Assembly (NCBI GenBank): GCA_964106645.2
Contig: OZ067042.1
Length of the DNA: 64,000 bases
From: Podarcis pityusensis
Taxonomy: Eukaryota
Reading direction: 5' to 3' (one strand)
Part shown: piece after piece, positions 2,548 to 64,000 of the stretch
Layout: every line of letters begins with the position of its first letter
Numbering within the stretch: the first letter of the stretch is position 1
The notes under the pieces: model-generated
Databases searched by the model: none
The model's input: only the letters and a program-made list of their open reading frames with translations
What the model was told of the DNA's origin: nothing
Translations under genes and position numbers: made by a program

Positions 2548-3874
2548 GTAAGGTTGTGAGATGGGCAGGAGTATATACCAGTTCATCTCATTCTAAGCTA
2601 CCTGCAAATCTCAACACCTGGGATTGCCCTCTACTGGAAGAGTCCCTCTTCCACAAGGGTGGCTGGGAGAAAAAGGTACAACAAAAAGAGTGATCAGTTG
2701 TTACCAGAAGTGTCAAACAGTGATCAGTTTTAAGAGCCTGGCTGTTTCCAGAGTTGTTTGACTGCGCTTACGAGATTAAAAGAATGCATCTCACATTTGC
2801 TGGGACTTTGTACCACACAAGGAGTTACATGCCTCGTGTGAATTGCTCTGCCCACCAAGGAGACGAGACAAGTTGTTCTGAACATCCTGGCAAAAGTAGT
2901 TCCTGTATATAGGGAAGTAATGTACAGAGATATGCGACATAGCTCTGTCCTGCAGCTGAGGTCAGCTTAAAAGACTTGGGGCACATGCCCATGATATAAG
3001 CCTGCATAAATGTAGAATGCCTCTGGGCAAGTTAAGAGGGTGGCAGGGCCAGCTCACCCATGAGACAAGGTGAGGCAAATGCCTCAGGTGGCCGGATCCA
3101 CTGGGCAGTGGATTCAGCCTCAAAGGGATGCTGTGGTGGCAGCAACAGCTATGGTGTACTCCTTGGAGGGCAGATCTCCTCAACACCCCCCTCCCACATG
3201 CCACCTCTACAGTGACTAGGGAGAAAATGGTGGGGGCTGCCCTCTGGGCATGATTAAGAGTGAGCTTCACCCCACACACAATGGCCTTTGATTCCCACTT
3301 CAACCATCCAGTAAGGTTGACTTGATACTCTCTATGTTCCTGCTGTAGATCTTCACTCACCCTTTCTTCCCTGGTTGCGGGGGGGGAGCACACCATTTTG
3401 TGGTTCACCTCAGGTGCTAAAATGTATTGGGCTGGCCCTGTCTCCTGGACCACGCCATAACGACACTCCTGGCCAAAGATATTCTGGTTTTCTTTATGGG
3501 TGAAGAAGCAGAAGAAGCAAACTGAGTAAAGTGTGTCAGTTTTCCCTTGGGATTCAGGGCGGTGTGATGACTTGTATGTCACTTGAGTACTTGCCTTGTC
3601 CCATTCACTTGATGCCCCAGTGCAGTGAACTGAAGTGCTTTTAGTGTGCAGGCACAAACAGGGACCAGGAAAGATCATGGGTCAACACACATGCATGTGA
3701 TTCCAGGCACATTTTACTCAGCCTCTGGGAAGAGGAAAATCAGAGGAGGGCACACTGCCTTAAAACTGTATGAGTGCCACAGGGTCCAGCTGTGGTCCTG
3801 CTAAGACCCTGTGGTGTTATCCCCAAGTTGCCTCCCGCAATTTGTGCCTTGTTGTGTTCTCACTCTTATCATAG

Positions 3875-4112
3875 TGGCCAGCTCTGTGAGATTCCACCCC
3901 ATGGCTCCCTCCAACCCAGCCCATGCGAGAGGGCAGAATGCCAGAATGGTGCCAACTGTGTGGAGCTAGGCAGTCGTGCCTTATGCCAGTGCCTTCCTGG
4001 CTTTGGGGGGCCCAAATGCGAGAAGCTGCTGAGTGTCAACTTTGTGGACAGGGACACGTACCTCCAGTTCACTGACCTGCAAAACTGGCCCAGCGCCAAC
4101 ATCACTTTGCAG
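3875..4112 (+). CDS. SLIT1: SLIT1 coding exon (EGF6 and start of laminin-G: [23 protein letters not shown])
   Basis: Acceptor tatcatag| and donor CAG|gtaagt; peptide matches SLIT1 rather than SLIT2/3. Confidence 0.95.
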
Positions 4113-4259
4113 GTAAGTGTTGATGAGCAAGGCTGCCGCCTCCGCCACCCCTAGAGCGGGCATCTGCCCACACTCTTCATCCGTGCCATTTGTGGGACTG
4201 GTTGGATTGTAGAATTAATGTTTCTGCCCCTTGCTTGTTCATTCCCTCGTTCTCTGCAG

Positions 4260-4390
4260 GTCTCCACGGCTGAAGACAATGGGATCCTCTTATATAATGG
4301 GGACACTGACCACATGGCGGTGGAGCTGTACCAAGGCCATGTGCGCGTCAGCTATGATCCAGGCACCTACCCCAGCTCTGCCATTTACAG
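4260..4390 (+). CDS. SLIT1: SLIT1 coding exon (laminin-G: [15 protein letters not shown]...SAIYS)
   Basis: Acceptor tctctgcag|G and donor AG|gtagcc; LamG GILLY motif. Confidence 0.95.
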
Positions 4391-4660
4391 GTAGCCCTCT
4401 GCCTTTGGCTTCTCCTTCCAGCTCAGAGTTACCCCCAGTCATTGAGCAAAGCTGTACATTGACCATGAAGGCAAAAGGAAGGGTTTGGGGGTCTGGATCG
4501 TGGGGAGTTAGTGCAGAAGTGACAGGGAACACAAGGCAAAGTGGATATGGGTGCTGCACTTCCATGCTGGATGGGTGCAGATGGCTGTGGATGCCAGATA
4601 TCAGGCCCAAGGTTGGGTGCCACCAGCCTTTCCCATCCCACACCTCCCTTCTCTCCCTAG

Positions 4661-4815
4661 TGCAGAGACCATCAATGACGGGCAGTTCCACACTGTAGAG
4701 CTGGTGACCTTTGAGCGGATGGTAAACCTCTCCATCGATGGAGGAGACCCCATGACCATGGACGGCTTTGGCAAGGCCCACACGCTGAACTCTGAGGCTC
4801 CACTCTATGTTGGGG
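4661..4815 (+). CDS. SLIT1: SLIT1 coding exon (laminin-G: [14 protein letters not shown]...APLYVG)
   Basis: Acceptor ctctccctag| and donor G|gtagga; LamG NDGxxH and LYVGG motifs. Confidence 0.95.
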
Positions 4816-5243
4816 GTAGGACTGTGACTTGGGCCCAATCCAGTTGGGGAGAAGGGGGTGAGAGAGGCTGGTATCTCTGTCACCTACATGCTTGCACCTG
4901 GAGGGCACTAACTGAACGGAGAACTCCTTCACTCTTCTTAGCTCATGTCCATTGGGTAGTATTGATGCAAGAGGAACGTTTCTGTTCAGTTCTCTCCAGG
5001 GTGGGGTGTCTGAGCTCATACTGCAGGGCACTAAGAGCCAAGTGCCAAACTGAGGAGGAGTGATGGGCGCTGTGGGAGAGGGGAGAGGGGAGAGAAACAG
5101 AAGAAGGTGGCTCTTAACATTCCACACAGCATTCCAGAATAAGGAATGCTCTTTTCCTTCCACCAGCACCATCTCTCTTTGCCCCTTGCTCTTCCCTCCT
5201 CTTCCTGCCCCTTACCTTGCTGTTCTTGCTCTCCCCTCCGCAG

Positions 5244-5532
5244 GGATGCCCGTGGATGTGAACTCTGCCGCCTTCCGCCTCTGGCAGATCCTGAATGGCT
5301 CCAGCTTCCATGGCTGCATCCGCAACCTCTACATCAACAACGAGCTGCAGGACTTCACTAAGACGCAGATGAAGCCGGGGGTGGTGCCTGGCTGTGAGCC
5401 TTGCCGCAAGCTCTACTGCCTGCATGGCATTTGCCAACCCAACACCCCTCATGGCCCCATTTGCCACTGTGATCCAGGCTGGGTCGGGCCCCATTGCGAC
5501 CAGCCCGTTAGCAACCCCTGCCAGGGCCACAA
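5244..5532 (+). CDS. SLIT1: SLIT1 coding exon (end of laminin-[12 protein letters not shown], plus EGF7)
   Basis: Acceptor cctccgcag| and donor AA|gtgagt. Confidence 0.95.
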
Positions 5533-6118
5533 GTGAGTACACAGCAGCAGAATCCCCCTCCACCCTTTCCTTGTGGGCTTCTTCTCTCACTGCAGTGCTG
5601 TGTGCAAGATGGAGAGCGTGTGGGGAGGGACTGCAGCTCAGTGGGATTGCAGCTCCCTGTGTTCCTAAGTGTGACTGGAACTGCATCTTGTGGGCTCTGA
5701 TGGGCAGTATTTTGCCTCTCCTGTTTGCTCATCTCTGATGAGGCAGGGCAGGCAGGGCATTTATGACTGTAGCAACAAAAGCAGAAATTAGTTGTTTCTA
5801 AAGCCCACCACAGGGGCATAGGTTTGGGAACAGCGTTCAAGAACAGCACATACCATATACCAACTCCTCCTTCACCTTTAAAGCAGCCTCAATAAAGCTG
5901 TACTTGTGTGTTTGGAGGATAAGGAAAGCTGGGGAGTCAGTGAGAACGCTCCTCCTGTCTCACTTCTTTGTATTTCTAAGATGATGTTGGAGAAGCCAGG
6001 GTGCACAGAGAATCTTGCAGGTCCTTCCTATGTTAAATGCTGCTTCTAGAAGATGGTGGCCTAACTGCAACCTTTTGAATTCACCTATATTTAGCTTTAT
6101 GTTTCACTCATTCTACAG

Positions 6119-6330
6119 GTGCGTCCATGGAATCTGCATGCCCCTTGATGCCCTCTCCTATAGTTGCCAGTGTCAGGATGGCTACAAGGGAGCCTTGTGC
6201 AACCAGCAAGGGGAACTCCACAACCCATGCAAGAGCTTGCAGTGTGTTCATGGTCAGTGCCAGATCTCAGACACAGGCGAGGCCTTCTGTGAATGCAACG
6301 GGGGATTTGATGGCGACCTCTGTGACCAAG
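6119..6330 (+). CDS. SLIT1: SLIT1 coding exon (EGF8-9)
   Basis: Acceptor ttctacag|G and donor CAAG|gtcagg; two EGF cysteine patterns. Confidence 0.94.
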
Positions 6331-7006
6331 GTCAGGCACATCTCCCTTTCTTCCTTACATTCCCATGTGCCGCATAGCTAAGGACCCCTGAGGGCCCTTC
6401 CCTGATAAGACACCTGGGCCTCTACCTCAGCTGCCGTATTGTGTTAAGCCAGGTATGCCCACCGTGGGCAGAAGAAACCCCAGCCAGGGCGACCTTAGAT
6501 GCTATTTCTTGCCCAGCCTCTTCCCCTAGTAAGTTTTCTAACAACTGTAGACCCCCATCCCTTCTGTTGCACCAGCTATAAATGGGAATTTGAAATTCTG
6601 TGGTCCCACAAAACAGCCAGTGTTGTACATCCCAGTACAATATCATTGCACTCTTCTTCCAGACACTATAGCCACAACTTTGTAAGGGAGCATGAGCAAC
6701 TGAGCCACAAATTCTTGATTCCCCAACCCCACCCCACCCCCCGTCCTGCCTCTCTGTCCTCTCCTTCCATTGACAAAAAGCAAGACCAGTTTTGCAGGAC
6801 CCCCTTCCAACCAGATAAGGGACAGATAAGATTTTTTTCTACCTGTCCCTAACCATTCAAAAGGCAAGATCATTCATCATAGTATGCTTATAGAATGCCC
6901 AGTTTTTTGAGTTGACCTTCACCAGAACCCCAAGCATGATGTATAATGAAGGCTTTCTCAGAGGAGCCTCCTTGCCTGACTTCCCTCTTCCTAATGTTTT
7001 CCCTAG

Positions 7007-20160: not shown

Positions 20161-23100
20161 TTACTTTGCATCCAGACATCTGCGTTTGCTGGGTGAAGAG
20201 TCTTTGCTTGCCCTCAGCTTCCTCTTGCCCTGGGCTCTGCTGCTCTCCTGAATTCGCTTCATTGACCTAGTCAAGGCTTTGCCACTGCTTGCCTTTTGGG
20301 CAGCCACTTTGGGAGGTCGGCTGCTGGAGTCTTGCACCGCTTTCTGCTTGGGAGGCTTAGCAAGCCCTTCTTGCCTGAAAGGCAGACTTGCCTTTTGACC
20401 GGCCTTGGCTTTCCCCTTCTGGACGGAGGGCTTCCTTTTCCCAGGTCGCAAGTCATTCAGCTTCTTTGCCTTCTCGTTCCCAGACACAGGCTTATGACTC
20501 TTGTCGGCAGCCGCCTGCTTCCTGGTAGCAGGAGGCCCTGCAGGCTTCGGTTTACTGGCTTTCTTAAGAGGAAGCCTTTCTTTGCTCGAGGTGCTCAACA
20601 GCCTCTGTGACCTGCTGCTCTCGGTCGGCGACTTCTTCCTGGTTTGCTGAAGGTGGCCTTTGGATGAGGTGTCCTCCTGTACCTTGCCTTTCGCCTTTCG
20701 CCCCTTCCCTCCTCTTTCAACCAGGCTTGTCTTAGTCGCAAGTGGGGGGGCTTGGACCTGCTGGGCCAGTTTCGGAGACACCAGGGGCTTAATGCACAGG
20801 CTCTTCCCGCTCGGCTTGCTTTCAGCAGAGGGGTGCTTGGTCACGCCGTCGTTCTTGTCCTGCTTGGCCACCTTGCGTATGGCATTGAGTTTGCCTCGCA
20901 AGTTGGAGTACTTCCTCAGGATGCGAGAGCTAGTTTGCACAGGCGTGCTGGGAGGCTGGGTGCTCTTGGCTTCGGCTTTGTGTTCCACACTTACTTCGGA
21001 GGGAGGAGTCTGCTTCGAACTGGCAGCCTGCTCGGGCTCTTTGTCCTCAGAGCCATCTCGAAGCTTAGCCCACAGCCTCTGAATCTTGATGGTGTTTTTG
21101 GCCGGGGTCATAGCAGCAAACTTCTTCAAGTGTTTCTTCAGGCGCTCAGCTTGAAGGGAGCTAGGGTAGCTGCCGGAATAACAGCCCTTCTGGAGTGGAA
21201 GCTTGATGAGGGGGATGTCCCCCGGGAGACGGGTGTTCATCTTCTTCACAATGACCAGAGACTTGGTTTCAGTGGTCTCCATAAACCACTTGCAGATGTT
21301 GGACATGTCAAACCCCTTCATGAACAGCATCTGAACCGGGGAGAGCTTCTGGCCTTCCGTGGGCCCTTTTAATTTGCGGGTCCTCTTCTTGCTTTTCCAG
21401 ATCTCTTTCAGTTTGTCGGATTTATTCTTGACCTTTGGAGCTGGCTGAGCCTCTTTCTCCAGCTGAATCCACCCTTTCTGGACCTTCATGTACTGAGTGT
21501 TAAAGTTAGTGATGAGTTCTTGGTTCTCTTCCTCAGCACACCATTCCACAAAACTGGGCTTGTTGTCAGAGAGCACTTCCATGCTACTGAAGCCAACGGT
21601 GTCTTCACTCTGTGCATTTTCTTGGTCTGTGTCATTACAGCCTGCTTGTATAGTCACAGCATTAGAATCTCCTTGTACGGTTTCTTTTCCAGAAGTGTTT
21701 TTGGAGGCAGTGGCCACAGGGGTTGGGGCAGGGGTGTGCCTCAGGTTGTAGAACTGGAGAGCTGGCTTCTTAGATTTTACTGATCTCTCTGGTGGCACAA
21801 GCTTGCTTTCACTCCTGCTAACAGAACTGGGCCCATGCTGGGTGTGCAAATCCTCTGTAACCTCCATCATACTGTCAAAGTTATCTGGAGTGCCTGATGT
21901 CAAATCTGACTGCTTTTCACCCTTATCAGAGGTCTCTGCTGGGACGTGAACACTTCTCCTATCAGAATCACCCTCTAAGCAAATTTCAAGCATTGCCCCT
22001 GCCTTGTCCTTGTTTCCTTCTCCATTCTGGTCTTCCTCTACTATGGTCTTTTTCGCTAACTGTGTCTGAGAGGCCTGTCCCATTGTGATGTCATTTCTGT
22101 CACCTGGCTGCTGCTCAGAAGAATTCCCCATGTTGTTTAGCAGTGTTTCCTGGAACCCATCATTTGGGAAACACAGCGATGCTGCCCCGTCAAGTTGCAC
22201 CTCCCTCTTGAAACGCTTAGCACCAGGGCTTTTAGAAAGCTTGATCTGAACTTGAGGAGGCTGTAGAGACATGGAAGAAGTTGATTGCTCAGGACTATCC
22301 TCTGCAGATGACAGGGATTGCTGGCTTCGAAGACAGCGATCGGATACAATCTGAGGTTTTTTCTCCCGCTTTCGTTTTTTGTCCGGGCTTGTTTTGGAAG
22401 AAGCTCCCTCCTTGTTGTCCACTTCTGATGTTTGGGGCACTGCTGGAGCTTCGCTATCAAGTTCCTTTCCATCATCCACCTTGCTTGTTTCACTTGTATC
22501 TTTTACTGTTCCCTCTCCCCAATCTTCATCATTATCCGCAACAGGCAACACAGTCTCACTTTCCCCAGAGTGGATTCCACCTGAGTCCAGAATCCCTTCA
22601 ATGCTATTTTGAGTATTAATACTTTCATGTGCATCTGCACCCTGCAAGCTGCCAGGGAGCTCTGCAGCATCCAAGTCAGAAAGTGGCTGTGAGAGCTCCG
22701 TATCTAACTTGCCAGTTCCCCCCACTGGAGATTCTATAGAAGGAGCCCCTGAAGGAGCCTCTAGGTCAATATGGGCAGGAGGCTCAGACACCACAATGCC
22801 AGGAGACACTGCCCTTGAACTGGCAACAGGTTCCCCTGGACACATATGCTCTGTGATAGGAGGGAGTTCACCAGGGAAGGCTATGGAAGGCTCCAGACGG
22901 ACAAGGGCAGGAGGTTCTGCCAGGTCTATAGGGGAAAGAAGTGGGGGTTCCACATCAGAAGGTAGTTCTACAAATGGTGGCAAGTGTTCAACAGGGGCAG
23001 GCTCCTCCAGTGGAGGCATCAAGTCCATTCCGGGGGAAAGGTCTTCAGGGGGCTGAAGGGCCATGCTGTCAGGAGGCACCTGGTCTGGAAGAATGGAAGG

Positions 23101-24853
23101 CTCAGGGATAGCCTCGGTCTCTGAGAACATGGCATTTTCCTCACCATTGGCAACCTCTGAAGCAGACAACACCACAGATTCTCCTTTGTTGACACTGTCT
23201 TCATTGGGACTGCTACTCTTACAAGAGTCTGTGCCATTGCCAGCCTTCTGCACAGTGTCCATGTCCATTTCGTCCTGTGGCTCCCCTTTGCTCAGTTGGC
23301 AGGGAGAGACAAGAGTGGTCTGCAGTGAAGAATTGGACAGGCTGCCTTTCTCTACACGCAAAACAAGGCTGGGTAGCGGGGAGAGAGCAATTGTGGATGC
23401 TTCAGCAGAACTGTCTTCTCTCTCCTTCACAAAACTTACCTCAGGAGCGGCCTTCTCAGCCGGACGTATCTCATCTCCCTCCTGAGTACTGTTGTTGGAG
23501 GCATCTCCTTGAGGGACGGCCACAGCAGGTCTTTTGTCACCATCACCACTCATGGCCTGGGCTGCTGCTAAGCAGCTATCACTCGGAAGAGAAGCTCCCT
23601 GGCTAGGGCTTGTCAGCACCTCAGGCCTTGATGCCAGTGTGTTCCCACTCTCCTGTACATGGGAAGTCTTGGCCAAGGTGCGAACTGTGGGAATCTCACA
23701 GCACTCACCGTTGTAGTAGTATCCACGAGTGCTCTTCCTTGCCGTCTTCCTAGAGGAGACCACCCTCTTGCTCTCAAAGTGGCACTCTGTAATTGGCTGG
23801 CTGATATAAACAACATCGCATTGGTTGTCATAGTCATTAATTCGCAACCCTGAAGGCCTTTTGCTCTTACGTGTGCTTTTGGTGGAGGATGAGTTACTCT
23901 TGGTCCTGGAGTGTCCATTGGTGGTTTTGTGGTGAACCACTGGCACAGGGCTATTGGATAGCCAGCCGTCCTTGGCATTCTCCACATGGGTCTTGTCAAC
24001 AGGTTGCATGTTATAGCTCCCCTTGCTTTTCCCTGAAGCCTGGAGGTGGTTCTCTGCCTTCAGTCTTGCTTCTTGGTCATTCATTTCAGTATCCGGGTGC
24101 AAAGAGGCTTTGGAGCTGCACTGCAAGGCATTCTCTTTGTCTGCTCTCCTAGGGGAGTTGGTGGTGAAGCCTGGCTCTCGTGTTTCCTCTGGGAAAGCTT
24201 TAAAAGGGTTCTTCTGGGAGCCCACCAGACCGTCTTCACTCATGTGTATGTTTGTTGCTTTCACAGCATTGTAGCCTCCCAGCAAAGCTCTATTTTGCAC
24301 CTGGTCTTTGTCATCCTCACCTTTCCTACCCCCCATCTCTTGGTCACTACCAAGGGCTTGGCCTTCCAGACTTTTAGCAGAGTGATGGGAATTGGAGGCA
24401 GTGAGGTATCCTTGAGAGGGACTGTCCCTGGGACTTGCAGAACTTGTTCTAATGCTAGGAAGCTCAGGGAAGTCTCTTCGGACAACTGGGCTGCAGTTTT
24501 CCCTTCTATCTGTAGATTTCAGATCCACAGCCTGCTTCAGGGCATGGCAAAGTTTGCGCAGAGAGCCATGAGACCCTGATTGCTCTGTGTCCAGGGAAGA
24601 AGGGAGCTTTGATTCAGAGCAAGAAGTTCCAAGCTCCTGGTTCTCAGTGCAATACTGGCTGCAGCCAGAGCTACAAGTGGACACATCCATGTTTTCTGCT
24701 CCAGGTAACTGCTGTCCCTCACAGCCTGTCTGTACTTCAGTGCAAATGTCGTTTAAGACACGGACGAAGTGCTTCTGATGGTACGTGCACAGTCTGACCA
24801 TAAATTTTTCCAATGGAGATTTCGGCTGGCCAAGACAATCTGCAGCGTCCTCA
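20161..24853 (-). CDS. LCOR: LCOR alternative terminal exon encoding the C10orf12/PALI1 region (PRC2-associated LCOR isoform 1; G9a-binding region and PIP domain)
   Basis: 4693-nt open exon; acceptor tctctctctag|T completes the phase-2 Gly codon from exon 51135-51228; conserved blocks SPLEKFMV, LRINDYDNQCDVVYISQPITECHFE, FVEWCAEEENQELI..QKGWIQLEKE, CKWFMETTETKSLV, SSLQAERLKKHLKKF and C-terminal KRRCLDAK; spliced product is 1674 aa from the ATG at 55638. Confidence 0.95.
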
Positions 24854-25190
24854 CTAGAGAGAGGGAGAGAGAAAGAATCAGTAAAGCTGGGTAGCAAATC
24901 ACTTTACACTGCAAATCTTCACAACTCTCTCTCTCCTTTCTGCTCCCCTACATTGCATACTCTACGAAGATGGCAGCTCCAATTGTCTACCTAAAATGAG
25001 CAGGCAACTAAAGCAAAAGCTCAAGATTATGTTTGTCATTTCTCCCTTTTCTCCTCATGGCTCACCTATAGCCTCAGTATATTAAACACTGAATAGTTAT
25101 TGGGACAAACCTTGCTTTATCCCTTCACATTTGTCCCTTAGAAAAATTGGTTCTAGGGGAAACCAATCTGAACTAGCTGGAAAACAACTA

Positions 25191-47173: not shown

Positions 47174-48143
47174 CTAATCATCCTTTGACTCATTCGCACT
47201 CTGTGCTGCCTCTCCCTGGGGATCTATCTCAAGCTTTACAGAGACATCCTGTCCCTCCGACCGCATTAATTTCATTTTTTTCTTTGGAGGGTTTTTCAAA
47301 GTGCCCAGCCTCTCTTTCACTTTATATTCCAGGGTGCTATGGGGAATCCCATAAATACTCTGAGCTTTGGAGACGCTCATTTTCCCACTCATCACCACAG
47401 AGATCGCTTCTTCCAATATCTCACTGTTGTACTGTCTGTATCTGCCTCTTTTCTTCCGAGGTTGCTTAGAGCCAGGATCTCCCTCTTGATCAGAGGTGGG
47501 ATATGGCTGTCCAGAGGTAGATTGCTCAGCATCTGAGCCCCAGGAGTCTGGTCCGGGATCCAGCAAGCTCCTTCTGTTTTGTTTCGGAAGGATAGCCCTT
47601 AACTTTTTACTAAGCGCGCTCTCCGTTTGTGAACCCATCACCAAAGAGCTATAGCTATACTGGTCGCCAGAACGGGACTCCCATGAAAGGTCCATGCCTC
47701 GAACTTGTGGTATCTTTAAATCCACAGGAGTTGAATGGCTCATGTCCTTTTTCCCATCCTGTTTAGTTTGAAGTGCCATTTTTTGAAAGGCTGAATTTTC
47801 TGTAAGAAAAGGAAGGTCACTGATGTTGCTGAGTGCACCGTTTCCCCTGAATTTCATTCGGGTGAAGTTGAATTCGTAGTGTGGTTTTGCCCAAGAAGCC
47901 TCCCTGGATAGTATCATGTGCTGTCCGTGATTCTGCAGCCCAGACGGCCCATGGCTGGCAGCTGTAGCATGCTGGTTTCTGCTCAGCAGTTCTTCGCTTA
48001 TCTGCAGTGATCGAGCCAATGGAACTTTGAGAGATGTGGAGTGGCCAGACCCTTCCCTCGTTCCATCCTGCCAACTTCTCGGGGGCACCCCATCACCACT
48101 CCGAAGTCCCTCTGCATGGTGCTGGCTGGGTCTCCCAGGTCGC
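47174..48143 (-). CDS. LCOR: LCOR canonical terminal exon (HTH/pipsqueak-type DNA-binding domain and NLS)
   Basis: Acceptor ccatccaattag|G; encodes KQPRKKRGRYRQYNSEILEEAISVVMSGKMSVSKAQSIYGIPHSTLEYKVKER; spliced CDS is 238+94+970=1302 nt, i.e. 433 aa, the length I recall for mammalian LCOR. Confidence 0.97.
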
Positions 48144-49681: not shown

Positions 49682-51134
49682 AACTAGCACTTTGAAAGAC
49701 AAAGGGCAATAGTTAACTGACATTTAACTTAACAGTACAAAGCAGAAACACATGCTGATCTCTTAAAGATGCTTTCAGTCAGCCATGTAGGAACACTTTC
49801 TTTTTTTTAATGCACAGAACCTGTTAGAATATTCAGAAAGGGAACAGAAATTGATATTCTCCTTCACAATACAGTGTTTAGAGTTCTGACATACAGGGTT
49901 AAGTAATATATCCATGTTGTGAGGAATTTAAATGTCTCTTTTGCAGTTATAAGTCAGTGACTGTCAACAATGGTTATTTTTATATCACTAGAAGTCCAGC
50001 AACTTGAAGATTATGTAATTCCACATCTATATTCAGCCGCTTAATATTCTAAAGGCCAATTAGCTTTAAAATTATACAAAAAATGTATTCTATTGCAGCA
50101 TTTTAAAGTATCACCCCAAATTTCTTTATTCTCATGTATCTTCTCCCTATCAGCACATGCAACAAAAAATACAAAGTTGATGGGATTGTATAACCTTCAC
50201 CAAGAAAAATTTGCACCCAGAAACTGCCTACAAGTCTAATAATAGTATAGTATTAGTAATGTTTGAATTATTGAGTATTCATCTTGGAAACAGCTCCAAG
50301 GTAAGTAATTACAAATCCGTCATTAGAAAACAAATGGAATTATAGCACTGTACTATAATAGTAGGTTATACAAAAAAATAATCCTAACAAATATTTTACA
50401 ATTCTTGCTCAACCACTATCTTTACTTTAGTGGCCTTGCCTAACATTCTGACTACTAAAGGAAACACTGTTTGGTTTGCTGATCTATTCAAACTAGGCAG
50501 CCATCATCCCATCCTATCAAAGGCTGAGATCGGGTTCAGATACTCATCAAGCCTCATGTGATCACCTGTGGGATGTGCATGGAACTACCAAAGGTTCACA
50601 ACCCAACAAAGATCATGTGCAGCCACTGGTTGTATGACCTGATACCCCATACATGAAGCCACTGAAACTGCATTGTGATAACACTTTTTGACTTGCTACA
50701 ATCATGAAAACTGCAGTAGTCATTTGTATAAGCTTCAAGGGGAAATGGTTGTTCATACAACTGGCACCCAACATAACCCCTGCCAAGTTGTTAGCCCACT
50801 CATAGGCCCAATGCTCCCATAGTCAAATGCACAGGTGTGGCTGAGCATGTGAACAAAGTCAAAATAGTCAAATTTTCAAAAGGTTGAAAGATCATAGCTC
50901 TACATTTCATATATCAGGTACAAAACCAAAGTATTCCTGAAATGGAATTAATTTTTCAGTTGACTTCATATTTAAGGATTGGAAGAAGGTGTTTTAACAA
51001 GATGTAATTATACTCTGAAGGGTTAAATCAACCCTGTCTATGGAAGCAATAAGGAAGAATTTGACCCTCAGTTTGTTGTTATGCAAATAACTTGAGGGGG
51101 GTTTTAGCTTAAAAATACTAAGAATTTCCCTTAC

Positions 51135-51228
51135 CCATTCCCAGGAGTAGCGGAGCAGCCAGGTGAATGGCTCAAGGAGGCGCTGCCTGCACATGGACTT
51201 TTCTTAGTGGACAGATCAAGTACTCCGT
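51135..51228 (-). CDS. LCOR: LCOR shared coding exon (second CtBP motif VLDLS); its donor serves both terminal exons
   Basis: Acceptor ctctgcag|AC and donor GG|gtaagg; encodes DGVLDLSTKKSPCAG...GNG. Confidence 0.95.
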
Positions 51229-51924
51229 CTGCAGAGACATGAGAATTACTTGAGAATAGGAAGAAATTAATAAAACTAAACACACACAAACATACAACTT
51301 GGTAAGTTTTTATGGCTGAAACTCTCTCAGTTAATCTTGGGTTGCTTTGGAACTTCCTACTGAACCTCAACCAAAGTCTCTTGATATATCAGCCATTATT
51401 TTATTTTCCTTATTTTGTTTTGTTAAGGGCATATCGATATTATGACTTTCATTCAATAAAATATTAATGGTAGATTAAACAGTATGAACACATTATATCT
51501 GAGAGCATAGAATGCAGGTTAATTTCAAAACATAGTTCTCTGCATATACTTCATAATGTCTGAAAAGTGGATCAAGTTACTTCTTTTTGTGCATGTATAC
51601 TTCTTGTTATCCACCATACATTCATTAAGATGTAGTCTATGTACTGATAGTTTCAAGTAAGACACAAAGCAGAACAGGAAAGAAAAAACATCTTAACAAG
51701 CAGAACCGAAGTTCATGTACCCATAAAAGAAAACTCAACAAGTGTTTAATTCAAGAACTACAAAATGGAGCAAGAGTGGAGAAATTATTGCCTTACAATT
51801 ATTATTGCAAACAAACTGCAGCTTTCATATTAAGTATTTTCTGGGTACACTTCATTTTATTTAATATATTTATATTCCATCTTTAAATTTAGCAAAAACA
51901 ATACAATTTAATGGGAAAGCTTAC

Positions 51925-54901: not shown

Positions 54902-55400
54902 AATGTGTAGGATACCACATACTTAAAAGATGTCACACACAAAGAACTAAACACACAAAGAAAGTTGTAATTGACACGAAGGACTATATTTTAAGTAAAT
55001 AAAACCGCCTTTACTAAGCGGCTGCTGTAAGACAATTTGAGTATTCAGCTCCAATTACATGCATTCTGCTTATGAGCAAATTGCCAAAATACTTGCCAAG
55101 TGTGATTACAGGCACAATTCACTACATGGAGGCTGGAAGTACACTATCAAACCCATTAATTTCCCAGAGAGTAAGTTTCTTTTCTGGCAGACCCAGCATC
55201 CATCTGGAATATGCTTAATAAAATGAGGGCACATAGCTGTTAGCACTTTCGCACCATTTTCAGCACAGCTTTTCTCCATTCCCTTATGCACTACTAATCA
55301 ATCCATGCCTCTCTTCTTTCCGTTCTATGATTTACTTAGTCATTAATGGCCAGCAAATTGCAAATGGTTGCAAGGGGCTATGAACAGAAATGTGGCATAC

Positions 55401-55688
55401 CTTGTTCGCTAGGATCCAACTGAGACTTTCTGACAGTGAGGTCCAAGGGCGAGTCCTGGTCAGCCATGAGAAGTTTGCTGAGCACAGGATTTTGAGCCGT
55501 TGCACCCACAGGGGATGAGGCTACCAGAGATGCTTTCAGCAGGCTTTGGTTCTTTGTGCTATTGGGCGAGCTGGAGTCCTGAGTAGAGCTAGTTTTTGAG
55601 GTATATTCAGCAGCAAACTGTCGAATCATCCGCTGCATGATCTCACGGGCCACTAGGGGAATGTTGGGGTCAGAGACCCTATGACTGT
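55401..55688 (-). CDS. LCOR: LCOR shared exon containing the conventional ATG (55638), the LxxLL NR box (LSKLL, 55468-55482) and the CtBP motif PLDLT (55435-55449)
   Basis: Acceptor ttttaccatttag|AC and donor CAAG|gtatgc; encodes [15 protein letters not shown]; the 50 nt before the ATG are open and in frame ([16 protein letters not shown]). Confidence 0.95.
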
Positions 55689-57085
55689 CTAAATGGTAAA
55701 ATAAAATTAAATAAATAAGAAGGAAGTTTTATGTAGAACAAATTTTAAAGCAAGACAACTTCCGATACTGAGGGTTGTGGGTTTTCTTAATTTAAAAAAG
55801 CTACAATATTATAACGTGTAAGTGCAAGATAATAAAAAGGCACAGATCTTACATCAGGGGCTCTCTTAATTGCATCTTCAAGATCTGAAGCAACTTACAG
55901 AATTGTGCACCCATTCCCTACAGCTCCCTCTCTTAACTGCATTTAAAAGAGCCGCTATGTCTGCACCAGCTCCTTAAGATCACAATGCCCAATTTTTAAC
56001 ACAGAGAATTTAAAAATGATATAATACATTCACAAGAATGAAATAATTTCTTCAATGCTGGAATGGGAAGAGGGAGGCAAATTAAGCATGTATTTCTTTG
56101 TATGGCGGTTTAAAGAATCACATTCCAGTATAGCAGCCCTTTACCAACATAAGACAGAGACCCTATGTATGTCCCCAAATTGAATTCTAGGTCTGCAATA
56201 ATCTGCCCACCAAAATAAGCTGAGCTACAGAGCATGAACTAATAAATTATCAATGTGAATCTCACCTAAGCCGAAATTCTCTAGGTAGAATTAGATAAGC
56301 AATCTTAAATCCACAATTTCTCTTACCTTCCCCACAACCACATGGATATAATATTTGCCTATTTACTGGTTCTGAGATAATATATGTGTGGTACTTTGAA
56401 CACAAACTCTGCTGTGTAGATGCTATTATTACTAACTCCCCAAAATTCTTCTCTTCCCACCAGTCCAGCTGCCTGAGAAATCTTGGGCACTACCAGGGCT
56501 TTTTTTCAGCTAGAACTCACCAGAACTCAGTTCCAGGTGGGTGTGATTGCCATTATAAGAGAAAAAGAGAAGTGTTCATGGCACCTCTTTTTCTAGAAAA
56601 AAAAGCACATGGCACCCTGCATGGAGACAAACTACCCAGAGGGTGGTGAGCCTTTTGGGCCCAGTGGGACAGAACTTTATCTCCCCTCAACTCTGTGAGC
56701 CAACTTCTAACAGGTGGGTAGGATTGCCCAAATGTCAATCATCTAACATCACAATAACACCGGAGGATTGATACATCAACATTGGGCCACAGGAGTCAGA
56801 GGACTCAGGAGATAGTTCAAAAGTCTTGTTCTTCTCTGTATGCAGCACTTCACAAATGCCTGAAAATTGTTGGGCCTCTGGGAAGTGCTTGGGAAGCATG
56901 TCAGGTGCAAGATATATTTAAAGGTGTCAACCAGTGTCCTTTATAGATTATTTGTACAGATTAAAAACCTTGAGATTTTATGGAAATAATACATGGCTAT
57001 CTCAAAAAAAGTATATTAAAAAGATCAGTTAGCTAAGCATGCAAGCCAGTTAGAGTATTGATTTCATTCTTTCATCATTACCAAC

Positions 57086-57218
57086 CTTTTCGATAAAAGA
57101 CTGCATGGATAAATTCTTCCGCTTGCCTCTCGAACCGAATGATTTTCGCTTGCTCTTGTCTAAGCAGAGCTTGGTGCCCAACTTCCAAAGCTGGCTCATC
57201 CAGACTGACTAAGTGTTC
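57086..57218 (-). CDS. LCOR: Upstream in-frame LCOR exon (N-terminal extension: [44 protein letters not shown])
   Basis: Acceptor tatttttcatag|GAA and donor AAG|gttggt; 133 nt, no stop, phase 1 joins exon 55688 in frame with the ATG; resembles the LCORL N-terminal segment. Confidence 0.8.
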
Positions 57219-58199
57219 CTATGAAAAATATTTAATACAAATGTAAAAATATAAACACCTCTTCTTTTTTTATGCTGACTTTAAAAAAACTGCTCACTGT
57301 AAAGACAGTGATACAATTTGATCTGATACAATTTGGAATATACGTCAGAATTTGTCAGCCATCTCTCATTGCTTAACATTTAGGGCTGCACATTTATTAA
57401 GAAGCAGTTTCCACTAAACTCAGTGGCAGCTACATCTGAGTAAATATATTCAGGATCTTAATTCATTTTAAATGATGAATGCACCAACAAAGTCACAATA
57501 TTAAATACAAAACAAGAAAGACAGAACCATCTTTTCATTATTTAATAAAATTTACCATATAAGGAAAAGTATTCAAAATTTTCACTTCAAACTGATTAAA
57601 CACAGGGTTGTTCCAACCAAGGCATTGGGGGTGTGTGTGGAGGAATGGCAACCTGCCTGGCTGCTGATTGCAACTCTACATTATGTGAACGGGCAGGGGA
57701 AAATTGGTTCAAGGAAAATATGGGGGGGGATTATGTCGCCACTGCTGCTTTTCCTACTAAGTTCTGCGCCAGTCTTGAAAATTTTACCACTTTCTCCTGC
57801 CCTCCAAAAAAACTACTTCATTTTTCTCCTCCCACCCACCTAAAAGTCCCTTTCCATCAAAACCTCTACCACACTACTCATAAACTATATTTAGGGAGAG
57901 TACATGCAAAGTAGCTAAGGAAACTGATCAACACTGAGGTCAAATCACATGCCCAGTTAGGCATGTAGGTAACCTATCCATTTTCTGTCAAGGTTGAACT
58001 TAAATCTCCAGAGTCAAGATTTTATGAAAAAATGACTGTCTGAGAACCCAATCATAAGCACACAATGAAATTCAGTTTGTTGATGCTCTTACCCCTATTT
58101 AAGAAATTGGGAACTTTACATCTGAAATAGACCTCTTTAAAAGAAATCCCACATCAAGCACAGCAGTTTGTGAAATCACTAATACAGGAAACAGTTACA

Positions 58200-58560
58200 A
58201 AGTCCCTACTTTCCATATGCAACCACTAGATAGCACTCCTGGCCATGGTTGCCACCTGGCCTTTCCAAGAAGAAACCTGGATTCAGAAGATATTGCCAAG
58301 CAGCAAACCAGGTTCTTTAAGAGGAGTGTGATTACGTTCAACAGGAATTTCCCCCTGTCTCCATTAAATCCCTGTTGATTAATTCTTATCCAAAATAGTC
58401 TGTAGGTATTTATGCAGGATGAGGACAGATGCTGCTGGATCCAAAATAAAGAAAAATTGCAGTTTGATGTTATCCACATGCAACTCTTTCCAACAGTCTA
58501 ACCATCTCAACCCAGTGACATTATACAGCTGTTAAACCATATTGGCAAGTGAGTATCTCT
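58200..58560 (-). mobile_element. Highly decayed LINE reverse-transcriptase remnant
   Basis: Minus-strand translation resembles the FN...LG....(Y)ADD.QL RT region; many lesions. Confidence 0.35.
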
Positions 58561-61136
58561 AAAAGGTATCATAGAAGTAGTAAAGGTGCAAAAATGATAA
58601 TCAAGGTCACAGCCTTTAAAATATTGCTTTAACTATGGGAGCACGTGTAAGTAGTTCCTGAATGTTATAGATGGAAATGAAAAGAAATGCTCGGTAGAGC
58701 CTTTCTTGTACTAAAGTGAAGAAAATGACAAGATGGTGTGCTCACCCTAGTTTTGATGTAACAAAATAAGTGGAGGGGGAAAAACACACCTCTTTCCATT
58801 TGTAGGTTCTCATAAATAATTATTTCACCCCACACAATATATAAATAACATGAAATTTCTATAAGACAAGATGGTTTCTAGTAGATATAAACCTATCAAT
58901 GAGTATTAGACACAATACCTAAATGTTATGCTCAAGTTCAAGAAGCAACATACCCTTCAGAATCAAAGTCTAGAACTGAAACAACAGGAGGCACCCATTA
59001 TCATTCTGTTCTGTTTCTGAGCTTTCTAGTTATTATTCACCACTGTTGGAAACAGAATGCTGAGCACAACTGAATGGACAGATCCATTTTTAGGTTCTTA
59101 ATCCAAAAGGTCGTCAAAACATTGCCCTTCAACACACACACACACAATGGGAACAAAGAAAAAGAAAGGACTTTAAAATATATGATCAATGCCCGTTAAG
59201 AGGTTGGGTATGAGGTAAAGTTTCTAGCATGTCTTAAGAAACACTCTCCCAAGTGCTTCAGGCAACTTATACCTTTAATATCCCACATAACTCCTTGCCA
59301 GAATTATGCAAAATAAGCAGCTTGGCTTAAGCTCTTCAACCTATGCATAATTTATAAAGGCTAAATAATTTTATTTTTTTCTTGGCACAATTTAGTTTAC
59401 CTTGCTACCTGTTTGATTCAATTTTTGAAACAGAAGTGCCCACATGAATTTTAAGACCCTACTTTATTCTGCTTTGTCTGAAAATCCATCCTTTCCTTAC
59501 AGGTAAAAATACCTTGTATAGAACAAGGTACCTAATGCTAGTATATATCAGTAAAGAACTCACAGCACTTTAAAAAAAAATACTTTCAGTAACACTGGCT
59601 TCATTGAATAGGGTTGCTGCTGTCCACATATGCCAACTGAATATGGTGTTATAGCGGTGAAGGACAAAAGTGGATCGAAAAGCAATTGTAAGGAAGGAAT
59701 AAAGAAGTGGATCAATTACAGTTAGGCACCAAATGTCTTCAAGGAAAGAACTACCCTGTGTGCTGGTGTATAGCACACTGTCAAACATAGGCTAATAACA
59801 CAAAACACAACATGCTCAACAGTTCCAAAACATCAACCACCCTCAGACTAAGGCTAGGTAGGGTATTATGTAGCCCCAGCAAATCTTAGTACAAAAAAGC
59901 AACAGTGAAGGATATCTCATGTATCCAGATCACAGCAAGGACTTACACCACTCTTGACCTATAGAACCACAATACGTAGGATCACAAGAAAGAACTTGGT
60001 GATGCGAAACTTTAGTGAAAATGTACTGTACACAAACCCAAGGATAACAGGGTGCTGATAAAAAAGTGCTACAGAAAACAAAGAAAAATAGAACATTTGT
60101 GAGTTCTGACTTTCCAAAGGAATTCTACAGTATTTATTCATGTCACACTTTCTTCCACAAGGCAACTCAACGGTGCATAGATAGGGTTCCCAAGTGCTTT
60201 CCCAATCAGGCACTGGCCAGAACCAATGCTACTTTAGCTTCAGCAAGCCTGTTGCAACATGTGCCCTCAAGCCATGCCCTAGGATCTGGACACAAATGCC
60301 AAACAGAAATTTCAACTCTTAAGCTAAAACGCAAGATGCAACACAAAGCACCAGCACTGGTAACCAAGGGAGGGGGAGGGCAGTTTAACACCAAAGTGTA
60401 TCTTAACATACACCCAGAACAGGGATGGGCCAATGATCAGCACCAAGATCAAGAAATGTTTATACCCAGGTAAGTCCCCAAGAGAAGCTACTAAAGGAAT
60501 GCCAAGCACAAACAACCAAGGCCTTGGATTTCAAGCACTCTGCTCACTGGCGGTGCTAGATCTAACAACTCTATACTATCCTTTCTTGCATAATAAGCAC
60601 AACCAGAAAATACACGGCAGAATAATCATGACTAAAGTAAACTATGACTGCCTACTGTAAACCACTTAGAAGTCTTTCGTTGTAGTAGACTGAAAATAAA
60701 TGTTAAATAAATAAAAAATAACTTCAGTGCAATATGCTCCTCTGGAAAGATGCATACAGTCCCTAATATTAAATTTTCCAACATATAAACCCCACCTCAA
60801 TTATGGAGGTGACCACAATGACAAGAGGAGCATGTATCAGCGAGACTGATGGAATGGGGATACAGATTGAGGCTTTCTTGTGCACTGACCAATCCACTCC
60901 TTTGCAATGAATGAATATATATATGAATGATTTGGTACCTACTTTTCTTTATAAAATAATCTGAAACCAGAGTATAACACAATAAAATGAATTAAAAATC
61001 AAGCAATCAATGAACAATAAAACATACATAGCTCAATAGCTATTTAGAAAGTGCAGTGACACAGATTCAATCCAAAGCCCAGATGGTTAAGTAGGTCTTC
61101 AACTAGAGCTGAACGCTAACAAGAGTTTCCACCAAC

Positions 61137-61279
61137 CAGTGTTTCCTTCTAGAAAAAAGGTACCAGTGCTCGCCATGAAGTTGTTACATTAAGTGCCACA
61201 TTTTTAAGCAGTGCTTTTCTTCTAGGAAAAAAAGTGCTGGTACTACGTAACCTTGAGTACCCCCAGAAAAAAAGCACTG
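61137..61279. mobile_element. Short MITE (related copy near 56494-56608)
   Basis: Termini cagtgtttccttct / agaaaaaaagcactg; degenerate 8-bp TSD ccaccaac/ctgccaac. Confidence 0.55.
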
Positions 61280-62517
61280 CTGCCAACTGTAAATGAAGGG
61301 TAAGGGAGTTCCACCATCAGGGCACCATGCACCCCAGGCGCAAACTATCTGATACTACTGTTAGCATGCATCTTTTTTGCATTGCAAACTACGATGAAAT
61401 ACCCACTAAGGCAAGGGTGCTTCCCTACTTGGTACCACACAAACAGCTAAGATAGCCTGGAGAAGAAGCAATCATTGAACACTACTTGAAACCACCAGAA
61501 GAACTGAGAGAGCTGAAGCAGTTAATCCATTTACTTGACACTATTGGAGGTGGTTCAAGCCCAGGAACACCTCTCCTGCGCACCACCACAGACTTCACAC
61601 ATATCATGTGTATGCAACAGTGCCCACAAAGGGATAACTGAGGCACTAACTGCCTTGCTGCAATAGCCACCAGAATGGGGTTTAACATCTTCCCAATGAG
61701 TAGTCACTCCTTATCAGCCATGATGATCTGGCAGGCCCCTCATTCCTGCCTCACCTAGAAGTGCCAACTTCTAGAATGTAGCCAAATAATTATTTTTATT
61801 TATAATCCACCAACTCATTAAAAAAAAACTAAGGTGGTGTACAGTTAAATCATTAAAACACCTTAAAATCTTAGGCTCATAAAATACAGAATGAATGGCC
61901 AACAGTGAAAATACAGGGGAAGATGGGAAATGAACACAAAGTGAGAGATGACCTGGGGATATGAGCATTCACTGACTCATTCCACCCACAATGGTCATTG
62001 AACTGTCAACCACTCCAACTAGTTTCCCCATCCTCTGTGGGACTTCACAGTTGAGGACACCAATAACTGCACTTGGAAACTTGTCATGAACAAACAAAAT
62101 ATTGCACCCAAATTTTGTGGTCCACTTGTATCATTAGTGGAACAGAGCCAACAAGACAAAGATCAGGAGTTGAGGTTGGGATGTTGCTCTCACAGAGCTA
62201 GGTTCTCGCCCCACTGTCTCAAATAAACTGCCTCTCTGCTACCTCTATCATTTACCATCTGAAACTGTTGCCAGCAAGAAATCTATTCAGCATATTGCAC
62301 TTGTACAAAAACATTATCAGTGGCACTAGCATCATCTAAGAATGAATTTATGCAAACCATACCCATATACTCACAGGAACAGCCTAAATATCCTAGAGTC
62401 TCAAGTGTAATACACAGAATCTACACCTAATATGCCATTCTGCAAGGCATGGATGACCAACTGGCTAGACTGCTGATGCAGGCAAACTGCCAATGGCATG
62501 TAAGAACTCTGCTAAAC

Positions 62518-62990
62518 TATCTGCACTGGCTGTCCATTTGCTACTGGGACCAGGTTCCAGGCTCTTGTGGTAATATATAAAGCCCTGAACAACTCGAGTC
62601 CAGGATACCTTAAGGACCACCAGAGCCCTTATATCCAAACTCAATCATTAAGATAATCCAGAGGAGCACATAGCTGTTCCCTGAGTTACAGAGGTCCAAC
62701 TGGCTTCAACCAGAGGGAATTTAGTGTTGCCAGGCCCATGCTGTAGAATATTCTTCCACCAAAGAAACAGGAGGCACCCTTGCTACTGACTTTTGGGTGT
62801 CTCATGAAGAGCTTTTTATGCTGACAGGTTTATAAAGTTATTTAAACTTTCCTGATTAGCCAATCATTTTAATGATTACTATTGGGGGGGGGGTTGTTTT
62901 CATGGCATGTTATGTTTTATTGTATATACAGTACTGTTGTACATCACCTTGATATTTTATGAGTTGGCAGTATACAAATATTTCTATAAA
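62518..62990 (+). mobile_element. L2 LINE 3' fragment
   Basis: ctgcactggctg (LHWL)...tataaagccctgaac...ccaggataccttaaggac (YKALN..PGYLKD) is an L2 ORF2 C-terminal motif, followed by an AT-rich tail. Confidence 0.7.
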
Positions 62991-63369
62991 TAAAAATGAT
63001 AAAAGCAGTGCAAAGCAACACCATTATCGCACAGCATAGCCATCTGCAATGCAGACACTTTGGTTACAATCTTAACACCCTATCACTGATCTATGACAGA
63101 ATCTCTGTGAAACAGGCATCATCATTGCCTCTTGTCTAAGAGAAGGGAAGAGTACAAAAATGGTTCCACATATGCAATAAAGAAACTTCTGCTAAGCTTG
63201 GACCCTTGTAGATCAAAATGAGCACTCCACACAGATCCCTATTCAGCTTCTTAAACATGACATGGGACTGATCTACTTCCCTCAGTGGACTCCGGCATAA
63301 CTGTACAAAGGGTCATGGAGTACAGACCACAAGTACATGCATGCCATCAAAGTTTCTTAACACCTACTT

Positions 63370-63900
63370 AAATAGCTAAAATGTATAAGACAAAAACAAA
63401 TCTGTGCTGGAGGTGTGGTAAAACAGAGGGGAAACATACATATTTGGTGGACCTGTGAAAAAATCAAAAGCTTCTGGAACACAGTGTATGATGAGCTTAA
63501 CAAAATGTTTAAGTATAACTTTATGAAAAATACAGAAGCTTTTATACTACGGATAACGGACACAGGCATAGCAAGAGATGATCAAAAATATTCCTTGATG
63601 CCATAGGAGCGGCAAGGATCCTAATTGCTAAAAACTGGAAAAAAGAAACTGTGCCAACAAAAAAGGAATGGCAAGATAAACTGTTACGAGTATACTGAAC
63701 TGGCTAGATTAACAGAGGCAATTAGAGATCACACTAGACAAGTTTCAAAAAGCATGGGGGGAAATGCAGAGAATACTTCACAAAACAGTGCCCTAAAATA
63801 CATACCTGGACTTGTTTCGATTAATGTCTGCAGGAGACTTTGTGGATATTTAAGTTATAATTAGAAAAATCTTAATAATTATTCATAAAGGACACAATTT
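63370..63900 (+). mobile_element. L1/Tx1-clade LINE ORF2 C-terminal fragment
   Basis: tgctggaggtgt (CWRC)...HIWWTCEKIKSFWNTV cysteine-rich zinc-knuckle region; frameshifted. Confidence 0.7.
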
Positions 63901-64000
63901 ATAAGAAGTAAATAAGGAGGCCAGATACAGGATAAAGGAAGTCTTTTATTTGGTTGTTTCTATTGTTGTATGTTATGTTCACTGTGGGGTTTGGGTGGGG

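What the first reader, a model, noticed from the sequence alone, without database searches (positions are those of the whole stretch)
55639..57218. Hidden in-frame exon gives LCOR/PALI1 an LCORL-like N-terminal extension upstream of the textbook start codon
Seen: a 133-nt exon (57218-57086) with canonical AG/GT and no stop splices in phase onto 55688. It reads [69 protein letters not shown], i.e. at least 61 extra residues with no in-frame AUG. Recalled knowledge: reference mammalian LCOR starts at MQRMI, whereas the paralog LCORL has a coding segment ...[38 protein letters not shown] at this position. Inference: sequence usually treated as LCOR 5'UTR is protein-coding, so both LCOR and PALI1 can carry a helical N-terminal domain initiated further upstream, outside this window. 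The ORF track misses it. Some predicted gene models may already include it.
Basis: partly seen in the sequence, partly recalled or inferred. Interest (0 to 1): 0.8.

Follow-up and report, generated by a model that had tools for sequence, protein, structure and literature searches.

The report
Annotated N-terminal coding exon of LCOR
The 133-base segment is a real, conserved coding exon that gives the reptile LCOR/PALI1 corepressor a longer N-terminus, but hundreds of public vertebrate gene models already include it, so it is ordinary annotation and not a hidden exon.

Summary
Observation confirmed. On the minus strand, 57218-57086 is a 133-nt open segment. It has an AG acceptor (the in-frame codon just before it is TAG) and a GT donor, and it joins in phase 1 to 55688, reading through to the MQRMI methionine at 55638.

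Interpretation supported, but not new. The 44-residue peptide matches residues 82-125 of annotated long LCOR/PALI1 proteins (E down to 1e-15 in 1.84 billion proteins). The 142-residue extension occurs in 519 PALI1-type and 440 LCOR-type protein clusters, from sharks to placental mammals. One is a Xenopus tropicalis RefSeq NP_ record. Its nearest relative is the squamate Rhineura floridana (65 of 67 residues across the junction).

LCORL carries the same module (47-62% identity), as does a hagfish protein. Against a bird contig, conservation stops at the splice sites, and 10 of 16 substitutions are third-position. A teleost transcript contig carries the whole extended ORF behind an in-frame stop.

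Exons 1-2 and the start codon lie beyond the window end. The module has no Pfam family, no solved relative and no confident AlphaFold model, so its function is unknown.

The parts
57086..57218 (-). LCOR coding exon 3 (133 nt, phase 0 to phase 1), encoding residues 82-125 of the long isoform
   Evidence: Searches show the sequence, the AG/GT boundaries and the TAG just upstream in frame. One search gives the protein hits, with the exon at residues 82-125. In one search, tblastn of nine orthologue N-termini hits 57218-57087 (the P0006 hit starts at 57215). In some searches, conservation against bird contig L001 is limited to 57237-57080.
55636..55688 (-). 5' part of exon 4: residues 126-142 ([17 protein letters not shown]) plus the textbook ATG (55638-55636), which is Met143 of the long isoform
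   Evidence: 65 of 67 residues across the junction are identical to Rhineura and Elgaria LCOR.
55492..55635 (-). Continuation of exon 4 ([15 protein letters not shown]...).
51134..51229 (-). Next shared LCOR coding exon (about residues 222-253 of Rhineura LCOR)
   Evidence: tblastn, 97% identity to P0090.
47177..48142 (-). LCOR-specific terminal coding exon with the HTH_psq domain
   Evidence: ORF; 84% identity to P0179; PF05225, E = 3e-15.
20161..24864 (-). Large PALI1-specific terminal exon (C10orf12-type, DUF4553)
   Evidence: 1578-aa ORF; 77.5% identity to Rhineura P0090; PF15090, E = 5e-178.

Best explanation
Window 57218-57086 (minus strand) is the third coding exon of the LCOR gene of a squamate reptile. 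In long transcripts, translation starts at a conserved Met (MAS.C..Q.C...) in exon 1. It then runs through exon 2 (50 codons) and this exon (44 codons plus 1 base) into exon 4, where the textbook MQRMI methionine is residue 143. The resulting 142-residue N-terminal module is shared by the short LCOR product (HTH_psq end) and the long PALI1 product (DUF4553 end). It is paralogous to the N-terminus of LCORL. It also occurs in a hagfish protein labelled LCORL, so it probably predates the LCOR/LCORL split. Shorter isoforms that start at MQRMI arise from other 5' exons or from exon skipping. Shown here: the exon, its phase, its protein-level conservation, its presence in annotated and transcript-derived products of other species, and the downstream LCOR/PALI1 exons in the window. 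Inferred: that this species transcribes and translates the long form, and that exons 1-2 lie just beyond the window end. The module's function is unknown. My best guess is a protein-interaction module, with a Cys/His-rich part in exons 1-2 that may bind zinc, followed by an amphipathic helix encoded by the second half of this exon.
For:: exon anatomy and in-phase join; 16 representatives match the 44-aa peptide (E 1e-15 to 4e-4), and in most of the long ones (1656-1978 aa) it sits at residues 81-126; the sources name these ligand-dependent corepressor isoforms X1/X2 (bird, ruminants, frogs, axolotl; a snake record without an isoform label; catshark and paddlefish records labelled 'uncharacterized protein'), plus the Xenopus tropicalis RefSeq record NP_001182625.3; 519 PALI1-type clusters carry the extension; 440 LCOR-type clusters of about 575 aa carry it; nearest is Rhineura floridana (65/67 across the junction, 77.5% over the PALI1 exon); against a bird contig, DNA similarity covers only the exon and its splice sites; there are 16 differences at codon positions 4/2/10 (P = 0.016), in 10 synonymous and 6 non-synonymous codons, and only frame 1 is open in both; all indels in exon-3 columns are whole codons across 76 species; a 2908-nt Logan contig (L002, teleost type) holds an uninterrupted 700-codon ORF from MASLCK... 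through the extension to the HTH_psq end, with an in-frame TAG two codons before the ATG. P0012, 238 aa on a 1009-nt Logan contig and frog-like by sequence, joins the peptides of exons 2-4 and continues past them. LCORL short isoforms and a hagfish protein align over the whole module; downstream LCOR and PALI1 exons lie on the same strand in the expected order.
Against: Exons 1-2 and the start codon are not in the window, so an intact long ORF in this genome is inferred from relatives. Most supporting proteins are automated gene models, which are partly built by homology and so are not fully independent of ORF conservation. The first half of the exon is only moderately conserved (mean column identity 0.54, against 0.83 for the second half). 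MQRMI-start isoforms are also annotated in the same species, so the long form may be a minor product.
Confidence: 0.9

Rival explanations
1. In this species the exon is mainly 5'UTR. Most transcripts start from another first exon without an in-frame AUG, ribosomes start at MQRMI, and the extended protein is a minor or tissue-restricted isoform.
For: MQRMI-start isoforms sit beside extended ones in the same annotations (for example Pithys X3 and Xenopus isoforms of about 1551 aa). The ATG at 55638 has an A at -3. A frame-2 ATG at 57199 opens a 49-codon upstream ORF that ends 14 nt before that ATG, and the same ATG and open frame 2 over the exon occur in the bird contig. This layout would fit reinitiation on such transcripts.
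Against: It does not explain the frame-1 amino-acid conservation from shark to mammal, the third-position bias or the whole-codon indels. It is compatible with the best explanation rather than an alternative to it: the question is how much of each isoform is made, not whether the exon codes.
Confidence: 0.3
2. The exon is a relic. It coded in the ancestor, but this lineage has lost the upstream start or exons, so the open frame is inherited and no longer translated.
For: Exons 1-2 were not found in the 6.8 kb of window upstream of the exon, and no transcript data could be laid.
Against: Four other squamates (Rhineura, Elgaria, Pogona, Anolis sagrei) have complete models starting at MAS.CGRQEC. 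The window exon differs from Rhineura and Elgaria at 1 of 44 residues and keeps both splice sites. Introns of this gene are long, so absence within 6.8 kb is expected.
Confidence: 0.04
3. The exon is conserved non-coding sequence (a regulatory or UTR element) that happens to be open.
For: Nucleotide identity to the bird is high (88% within the exon), including many synonymous sites.
Against: Similarity stops at the splice sites. Substitutions favour third positions, and only frame 1 is open in both species. The peptide is conserved at the protein level to sharks and in the paralogue LCORL. Transcript-derived ORFs read through it.
Confidence: 0.02

Closest known systems
RefSeq/Gnomon long LCOR isoforms (e.g. 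Rhineura floridana isoform X2, 1835 aa; Elgaria, Pogona and Anolis sagrei models; Xenopus tropicalis NP_001182625.3 isoform 1)
   Same: Same gene and same exon: residues 82-125, the same phase-1 join to ...[16 protein letters not shown], and the same downstream DUF4553 or HTH_psq exons.
   Different: Nothing of substance: 1 of 44 residues differs from Rhineura and Elgaria. The window lacks exons 1-2, which lie beyond its end.
LCORL N-terminal region (short LCORL isoforms of Callorhinchus, Dipodomys, Vulpes, frogs; a hagfish protein labelled LCORL)
   Same: The same 142-residue module with the same conserved Cys/His/Trp positions. These include the GFESILEGL block, the QAE..LNA.F.KK helix end at the equivalent of this exon, and DPNIPLVA after it. 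An LCORL isoform that skips the next exon (P0314) diverges right after ...FRKK, which fits a shared exon boundary.
   Different: It is a paralogue, not an orthologue: 47-62% identity, against 97% to squamate LCOR. The first half of the exon-3 equivalent is Ser/Thr/Gln-rich in LCORL and not alignable in detail.
Textbook LCOR (433 aa) and PALI1 as used in the literature, starting at MQRMI
   Same: Identical from Met143 onward: NR box, CtBP motifs, HTH_psq or the PRC2-binding exon. Reviews draw the protein from this N-terminus.
   Different: They lack the 142 upstream residues. In the papers I could search, none describes the extension.

Membership tests
LCOR (ligand-dependent corepressor), long N-terminal isoform | Peptide orthologous to residues 82-125 of annotated long LCOR | tested here: met
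   (59-86% identity to representatives across the hits). By inspection of the sequences printed, 43/44 residues match Rhineura and Elgaria. One search gives 65/67 across the junction.
LCOR (ligand-dependent corepressor), long N-terminal isoform | In-phase splice onto the exon that holds [16 protein letters not shown] | tested here: met
   AG/GT boundaries and a phase-1 join giving Asp, matching residues 126-150 of the orthologues.
LCOR (ligand-dependent corepressor), long N-terminal isoform | Downstream LCOR exons on the same strand (HTH_psq terminal exon; DUF4553 PALI1 exon) | tested here: met
LCOR (ligand-dependent corepressor), long N-terminal isoform | Exons 1-2 with the conserved start codon (residues 1-81) | not testable with these tools
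   no match to residues 1-81 in 55700-64000.
LCOR (ligand-dependent corepressor), long N-terminal isoform | Junction reads or translation in this species | not tested
Transcript-type contigs exist only for other species.
LCORL | Orthology to LCORL rather than LCOR | tested here: not met
   LCORL proteins are 47-62% identical over the module, against 97% for squamate LCOR over the junction peptide. The window also carries the LCOR and PALI1 terminal exons.
C2H2-type zinc finger (for the exon-1 part of the module, outside this window) | Significant match to a zinc-finger profile or structure, with Cys2-His2 in canonical spacing | tested here: inconclusive
   No Pfam hit at E <= 1. One PDB sequence match, to a ZFAT finger, at E = 0.69; it aligns F, L, H and H but only one Cys. 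The spacing is C-x4-C-x15-H-x3-H. AlphaFold models are low confidence.

The most novel reading that the evidence does not exclude
The 142-residue N-terminal module is an unnamed, functionally distinct domain. It occurs in LCOR and LCORL, with a counterpart in hagfish. It has nearly invariant Cys5, Cys10 and His30 and invariant Cys31, Cys70 and Cys73, and it ends in the helix encoded by this exon. It may bind zinc or a partner protein. In the papers searched here it is absent from descriptions of LCOR and PALI1. Its inclusion would be set by the choice of first exon, which would give two classes of LCOR/PALI1 proteins with different activities.
Probability: 0.35. Interest if true: 0.5.

Novelty: already known. 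Interest (0 to 1): 0.22.

Why it matters
For genome annotation it changes nothing, because the exon is already in public models for close relatives and for hundreds of vertebrates. Its only wider value is as a reminder. The LCOR/PALI1 proteins described in the papers I could search begin at Met143 and omit a 142-residue module. That module is conserved from cartilaginous fish to mammals, with a counterpart in hagfish, is shared with LCORL, and has no Pfam family, solved structure or described function. Anyone studying LCOR, PALI1 or LCORL could test whether the long form behaves differently.

Tried and rejected
1. RNA junction test: the look-up of sequencing runs listed runs guessed to be RNA that hold 17-25% of the words of 55400-57400. 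I draw no conclusion from the shares.

2. Structure: two AlphaFold runs on Rhineura residues 1-165, one with 76 orthologues and one with orthologues plus LCORL, gave mean pLDDT 45 and 47. I ran no fold search because matches to such models are meaningless.

3. Pfam on the extension found no family; the only match was a chance-level CSPP1_C hit at E = 0.033, below its cut-off. The PDB sequence profile gave only E = 0.69.

4. The look-up of encoding contigs for the Rhineura protein found nothing on record, so there is no squamate DNA comparison. A bird contig was used instead.

5. Literature searches for a described LCOR extension found none. The PhyloCSF paper mentions only the merging of LCOR with C10orf12.

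6. P0326, a placental-type Logan product that joins the exon-3 and exon-4 peptides, and P0004 could be human. I did not fetch, compare or search their contigs.

7. Disclosures. I used the large representative search first, because a 44-aa query cannot reach long proteins in the word search.

Full report
**Observation**

On the minus strand the sequence reads ...tttttcatAG|GAACAC...CGAAAAG|GTtggt. The segment 57218-57086 is 133 nt. Frame 1 gives 44 sense codons, EHLVSLDEP...AVFYRK, plus one base. The in-frame triplet just before the exon is TAG and the peptide has no Met, so this frame can only be entered by splicing from an upstream exon.

The spare G joins AC at 55688-55687 after the acceptor ...ccatttAG. 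That gives Asp, followed by [16 protein letters not shown] and the ATG at 55638-55636 (MQRMIRQF...). Read unspliced in frame 1 from 55688, exon 4 has stops, so the phase-1 join is needed. Frames 2 and 3 of the exon contain stops. An open run of 44 codons is not remarkable by itself (about 0.12 by chance). The evidence lies in the homology.

**What it is**

The 44-residue peptide was searched against 1.84 billion representative proteins and matched 16 (E from 1.1e-15 to 3.8e-4). In most of the long hits (1656-1978 aa) it sits at residues 81-126. I ran this large search first because the word search only sees proteins of 0.55-1.75 times the query length, so a 44-aa query cannot reach them.

The sources name most of these proteins ligand-dependent corepressor isoform X1/X2: Pithys (bird), ruminants, axolotl and several frogs, plus a Crotalus (snake) record without an isoform label. 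The catshark and paddlefish records are labelled 'uncharacterized protein'. The same cluster set holds the Xenopus tropicalis RefSeq record NP_001182625.3, isoform 1.

In these proteins the MQRMI methionine is residue 141-144. The preceding ~142 residues divide as follows:
- Exon 1: 31 aa, MAS.C..QQC...WRHKLIHC.
- Exon 2: 50 aa, VGFESILEGL...CLFCCLRREKVK.
- This exon: 44 aa.
- The first 17 residues of exon 4.

A bird isoform that skips exon 2 stays in frame (P0003 against P0018). This fits phase-0 boundaries on both sides of exon 2.

**How widely it is annotated**

A word search with the 142-residue extension found two sets:
- 519 clusters of long, DUF4553-bearing (PALI1-type) proteins.
- 440 clusters of HTH_psq-bearing (LCOR-type) proteins, mostly about 570-700 aa.

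Together they cover sharks, ray-finned fishes, amphibians, turtles, squamates (Elgaria, Pogona, Anolis sagrei, Rhineura), birds and many placental mammals. Platypus and marsupials appear among the LCOR-type forms. So both products of the gene are already modelled with the extension. One 84-aa fragment labelled human LCOR also appeared in a hit table; I did not examine it.

**Whose genome it is**

The large PALI1 exon in the window (20161-24864, minus) is 77.5% identical to Rhineura floridana, 69% to Elgaria, 62-63% to Pogona and Anolis, 48% to turtles and 38% to a tenrec. Across the exon-3/exon-4 junction, 65 of 67 residues match Rhineura and Elgaria. The window is therefore from a squamate reptile, not a mammal. 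A first-stage note on another piece of this genome also calls it a reptile (s1-728333).

One search made the junction peptide inside a local script and compared it only with proteins already fetched. This went against the instruction to work exon by exon.

**Gene layout in the window (minus strand)**

| Feature | Coordinates | Evidence |
|---|---|---|
| Exon 3 | 57218-57086 | |
| Exon 4 | from 55688 | |
| Shared exon | 51229-51134 | |
| LCOR terminal exon | 48142-47177 | PF05225, E = 3e-15 |
| PALI1 exon | 24864-20161 | PF15090, E = 5e-178 |

No match to residues 1-81 exists in 55700-64000. Exons 1-2 and the start codon therefore lie beyond the window end.

**Is it coding rather than conserved UTR?**

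- A Logan contig (L001) carries the bird form of the exon. It aligns to the window only over 57237-57080, that is, the exon, the acceptor tract and the donor.
- Within the exon there are 16 differences in 132 nt, at codon positions 4/2/10. Ten changed codons are synonymous and six are not. Only frame 1 is open in both species. The third-position excess has P = 0.016.
- In 76 orthologues, every indel inside the exon-3 columns is a whole number of codons.
- The second half of the exon (residues 102-125) has mean column identity 0.83. That is similar to the 0.86 for residues just after Met143. The first half is more variable, at 0.54.

**Transcript-type evidence from other species**

The 2908-nt Logan contig L002 (teleost type) has one uninterrupted 700-codon ORF. 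It starts gaaaATGg, two codons after an in-frame TAG, and runs through the full extension and MQRMI to an HTH_psq end. P0012 is a 238-aa product on a 1009-nt Logan contig and is frog-like by sequence. It joins the peptides of exons 2-4 and continues past them. Both must come from spliced RNA.

**Relation to LCORL**

Short LCORL isoforms align over the whole module at 47-62% identity (E 1e-34 to 6e-49). These come from elephant shark, rays, kangaroo rat, fox, a parrot, frogs and platypus. A hagfish protein labelled LCORL aligns as well. They share the nearly invariant Cys5, Cys10, Trp24, Cys31, GFESILEGL, Trp64, Cys70 and Cys73, the ...QAE..LNA.F.KK end of this exon, and DPNIPLVA after it. An ESM Atlas look-up also put LCORL clusters first, at 0.81-0.85, which is a lead only. 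The hagfish protein suggests the module is older than the LCOR/LCORL split.

**How it works**

- Shown: the exon is translated in long isoforms of relatives.
- Inferred: the same holds here.

The function of the module is open. It has no Pfam family and no solved relative. One non-significant match (E = 0.69) aligns residues 9-30 to a ZFAT C2H2 finger but matches only one Cys. Two AlphaFold runs gave mean pLDDT 45 and 47. Both predict a helix over residues ~93/95-122 (the second half of this exon) at pLDDT about 55. I ran no fold search on such models.

My best guess is an interaction module: a possibly metal-binding Cys/His part followed by an amphipathic helix. MQRMI-start isoforms are annotated beside the long ones, so the choice of first exon probably decides whether the module is present.

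**Literature**

The reviews and papers I could search draw LCOR and PALI1 from the NR-box end and do not mention an upstream extension. The whole-genome PhyloCSF paper mentions LCOR only for merging it with C10orf12.

**Verdict**

But this is the ordinary third coding exon of an already annotated long LCOR isoform. Novelty: already known. Interest is low. What remains is that the conserved 142-residue module is uncharacterised.

Noticed in passing
window 57199-57197 (ATG, minus strand) to 55655-55653 (TAG): In frame 2 the exon holds an ATG that opens a 49-codon reading frame across the same splice junction and stops 14 nt before the MQRMI ATG. The same ATG, with frame 2 open to the end of the exon, occurs in the bird contig L001. 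On transcripts where this exon is untranslated leader, it would act as an upstream ORF. Its peptide is not conserved.
   Followed up: partly
window 3774-6377, plus strand: Several ORF pieces with EGF-type domains (Pfam EGF, hEGF, EGF_Teneurin). They look like the last exons of a SLIT-like gene converging on the PALI1 exon. The SLIT1 identity is from my recollection of the mammalian neighbourhood and was not tested.
   Followed up: partly
P0316 (protein labelled Eptatretus burgeri LCORL): A hagfish protein aligns over the exon 1-2 part of the module with the conserved Cys/Trp positions, but diverges over the equivalent of this exon. The module probably predates the LCOR/LCORL duplication.
   Followed up: no
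P0020, P0024, P0155, P0275 (sheep, bighorn sheep and pig models, plus an unnamed Logan product): Some mammalian models replace exon 1 with a different first exon. Its peptide ends ...HIFNPPPKR, and the models resume within the conserved FESILEGL block of exon 2. This may be a real alternative first exon or a model reading through leader sequence.
   Followed up: no
Teleost hits: Teleosts show two distinct versions of the exon-3 peptide (one with ...ENGGGSQVLSECED..., one with ...GLSNQGLE...KDQTKINRLEKQAEEF...). This would fit two retained LCOR copies, possibly from the teleost genome duplication.
   Followed up: no
P0326 and P0004 (Logan products): These are placental-type peptides of this exon. 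P0326 joins the exon-3 and exon-4 peptides on a 1.3-kb contig. They could be human, so I did not fetch or compare their contigs.
   Followed up: no
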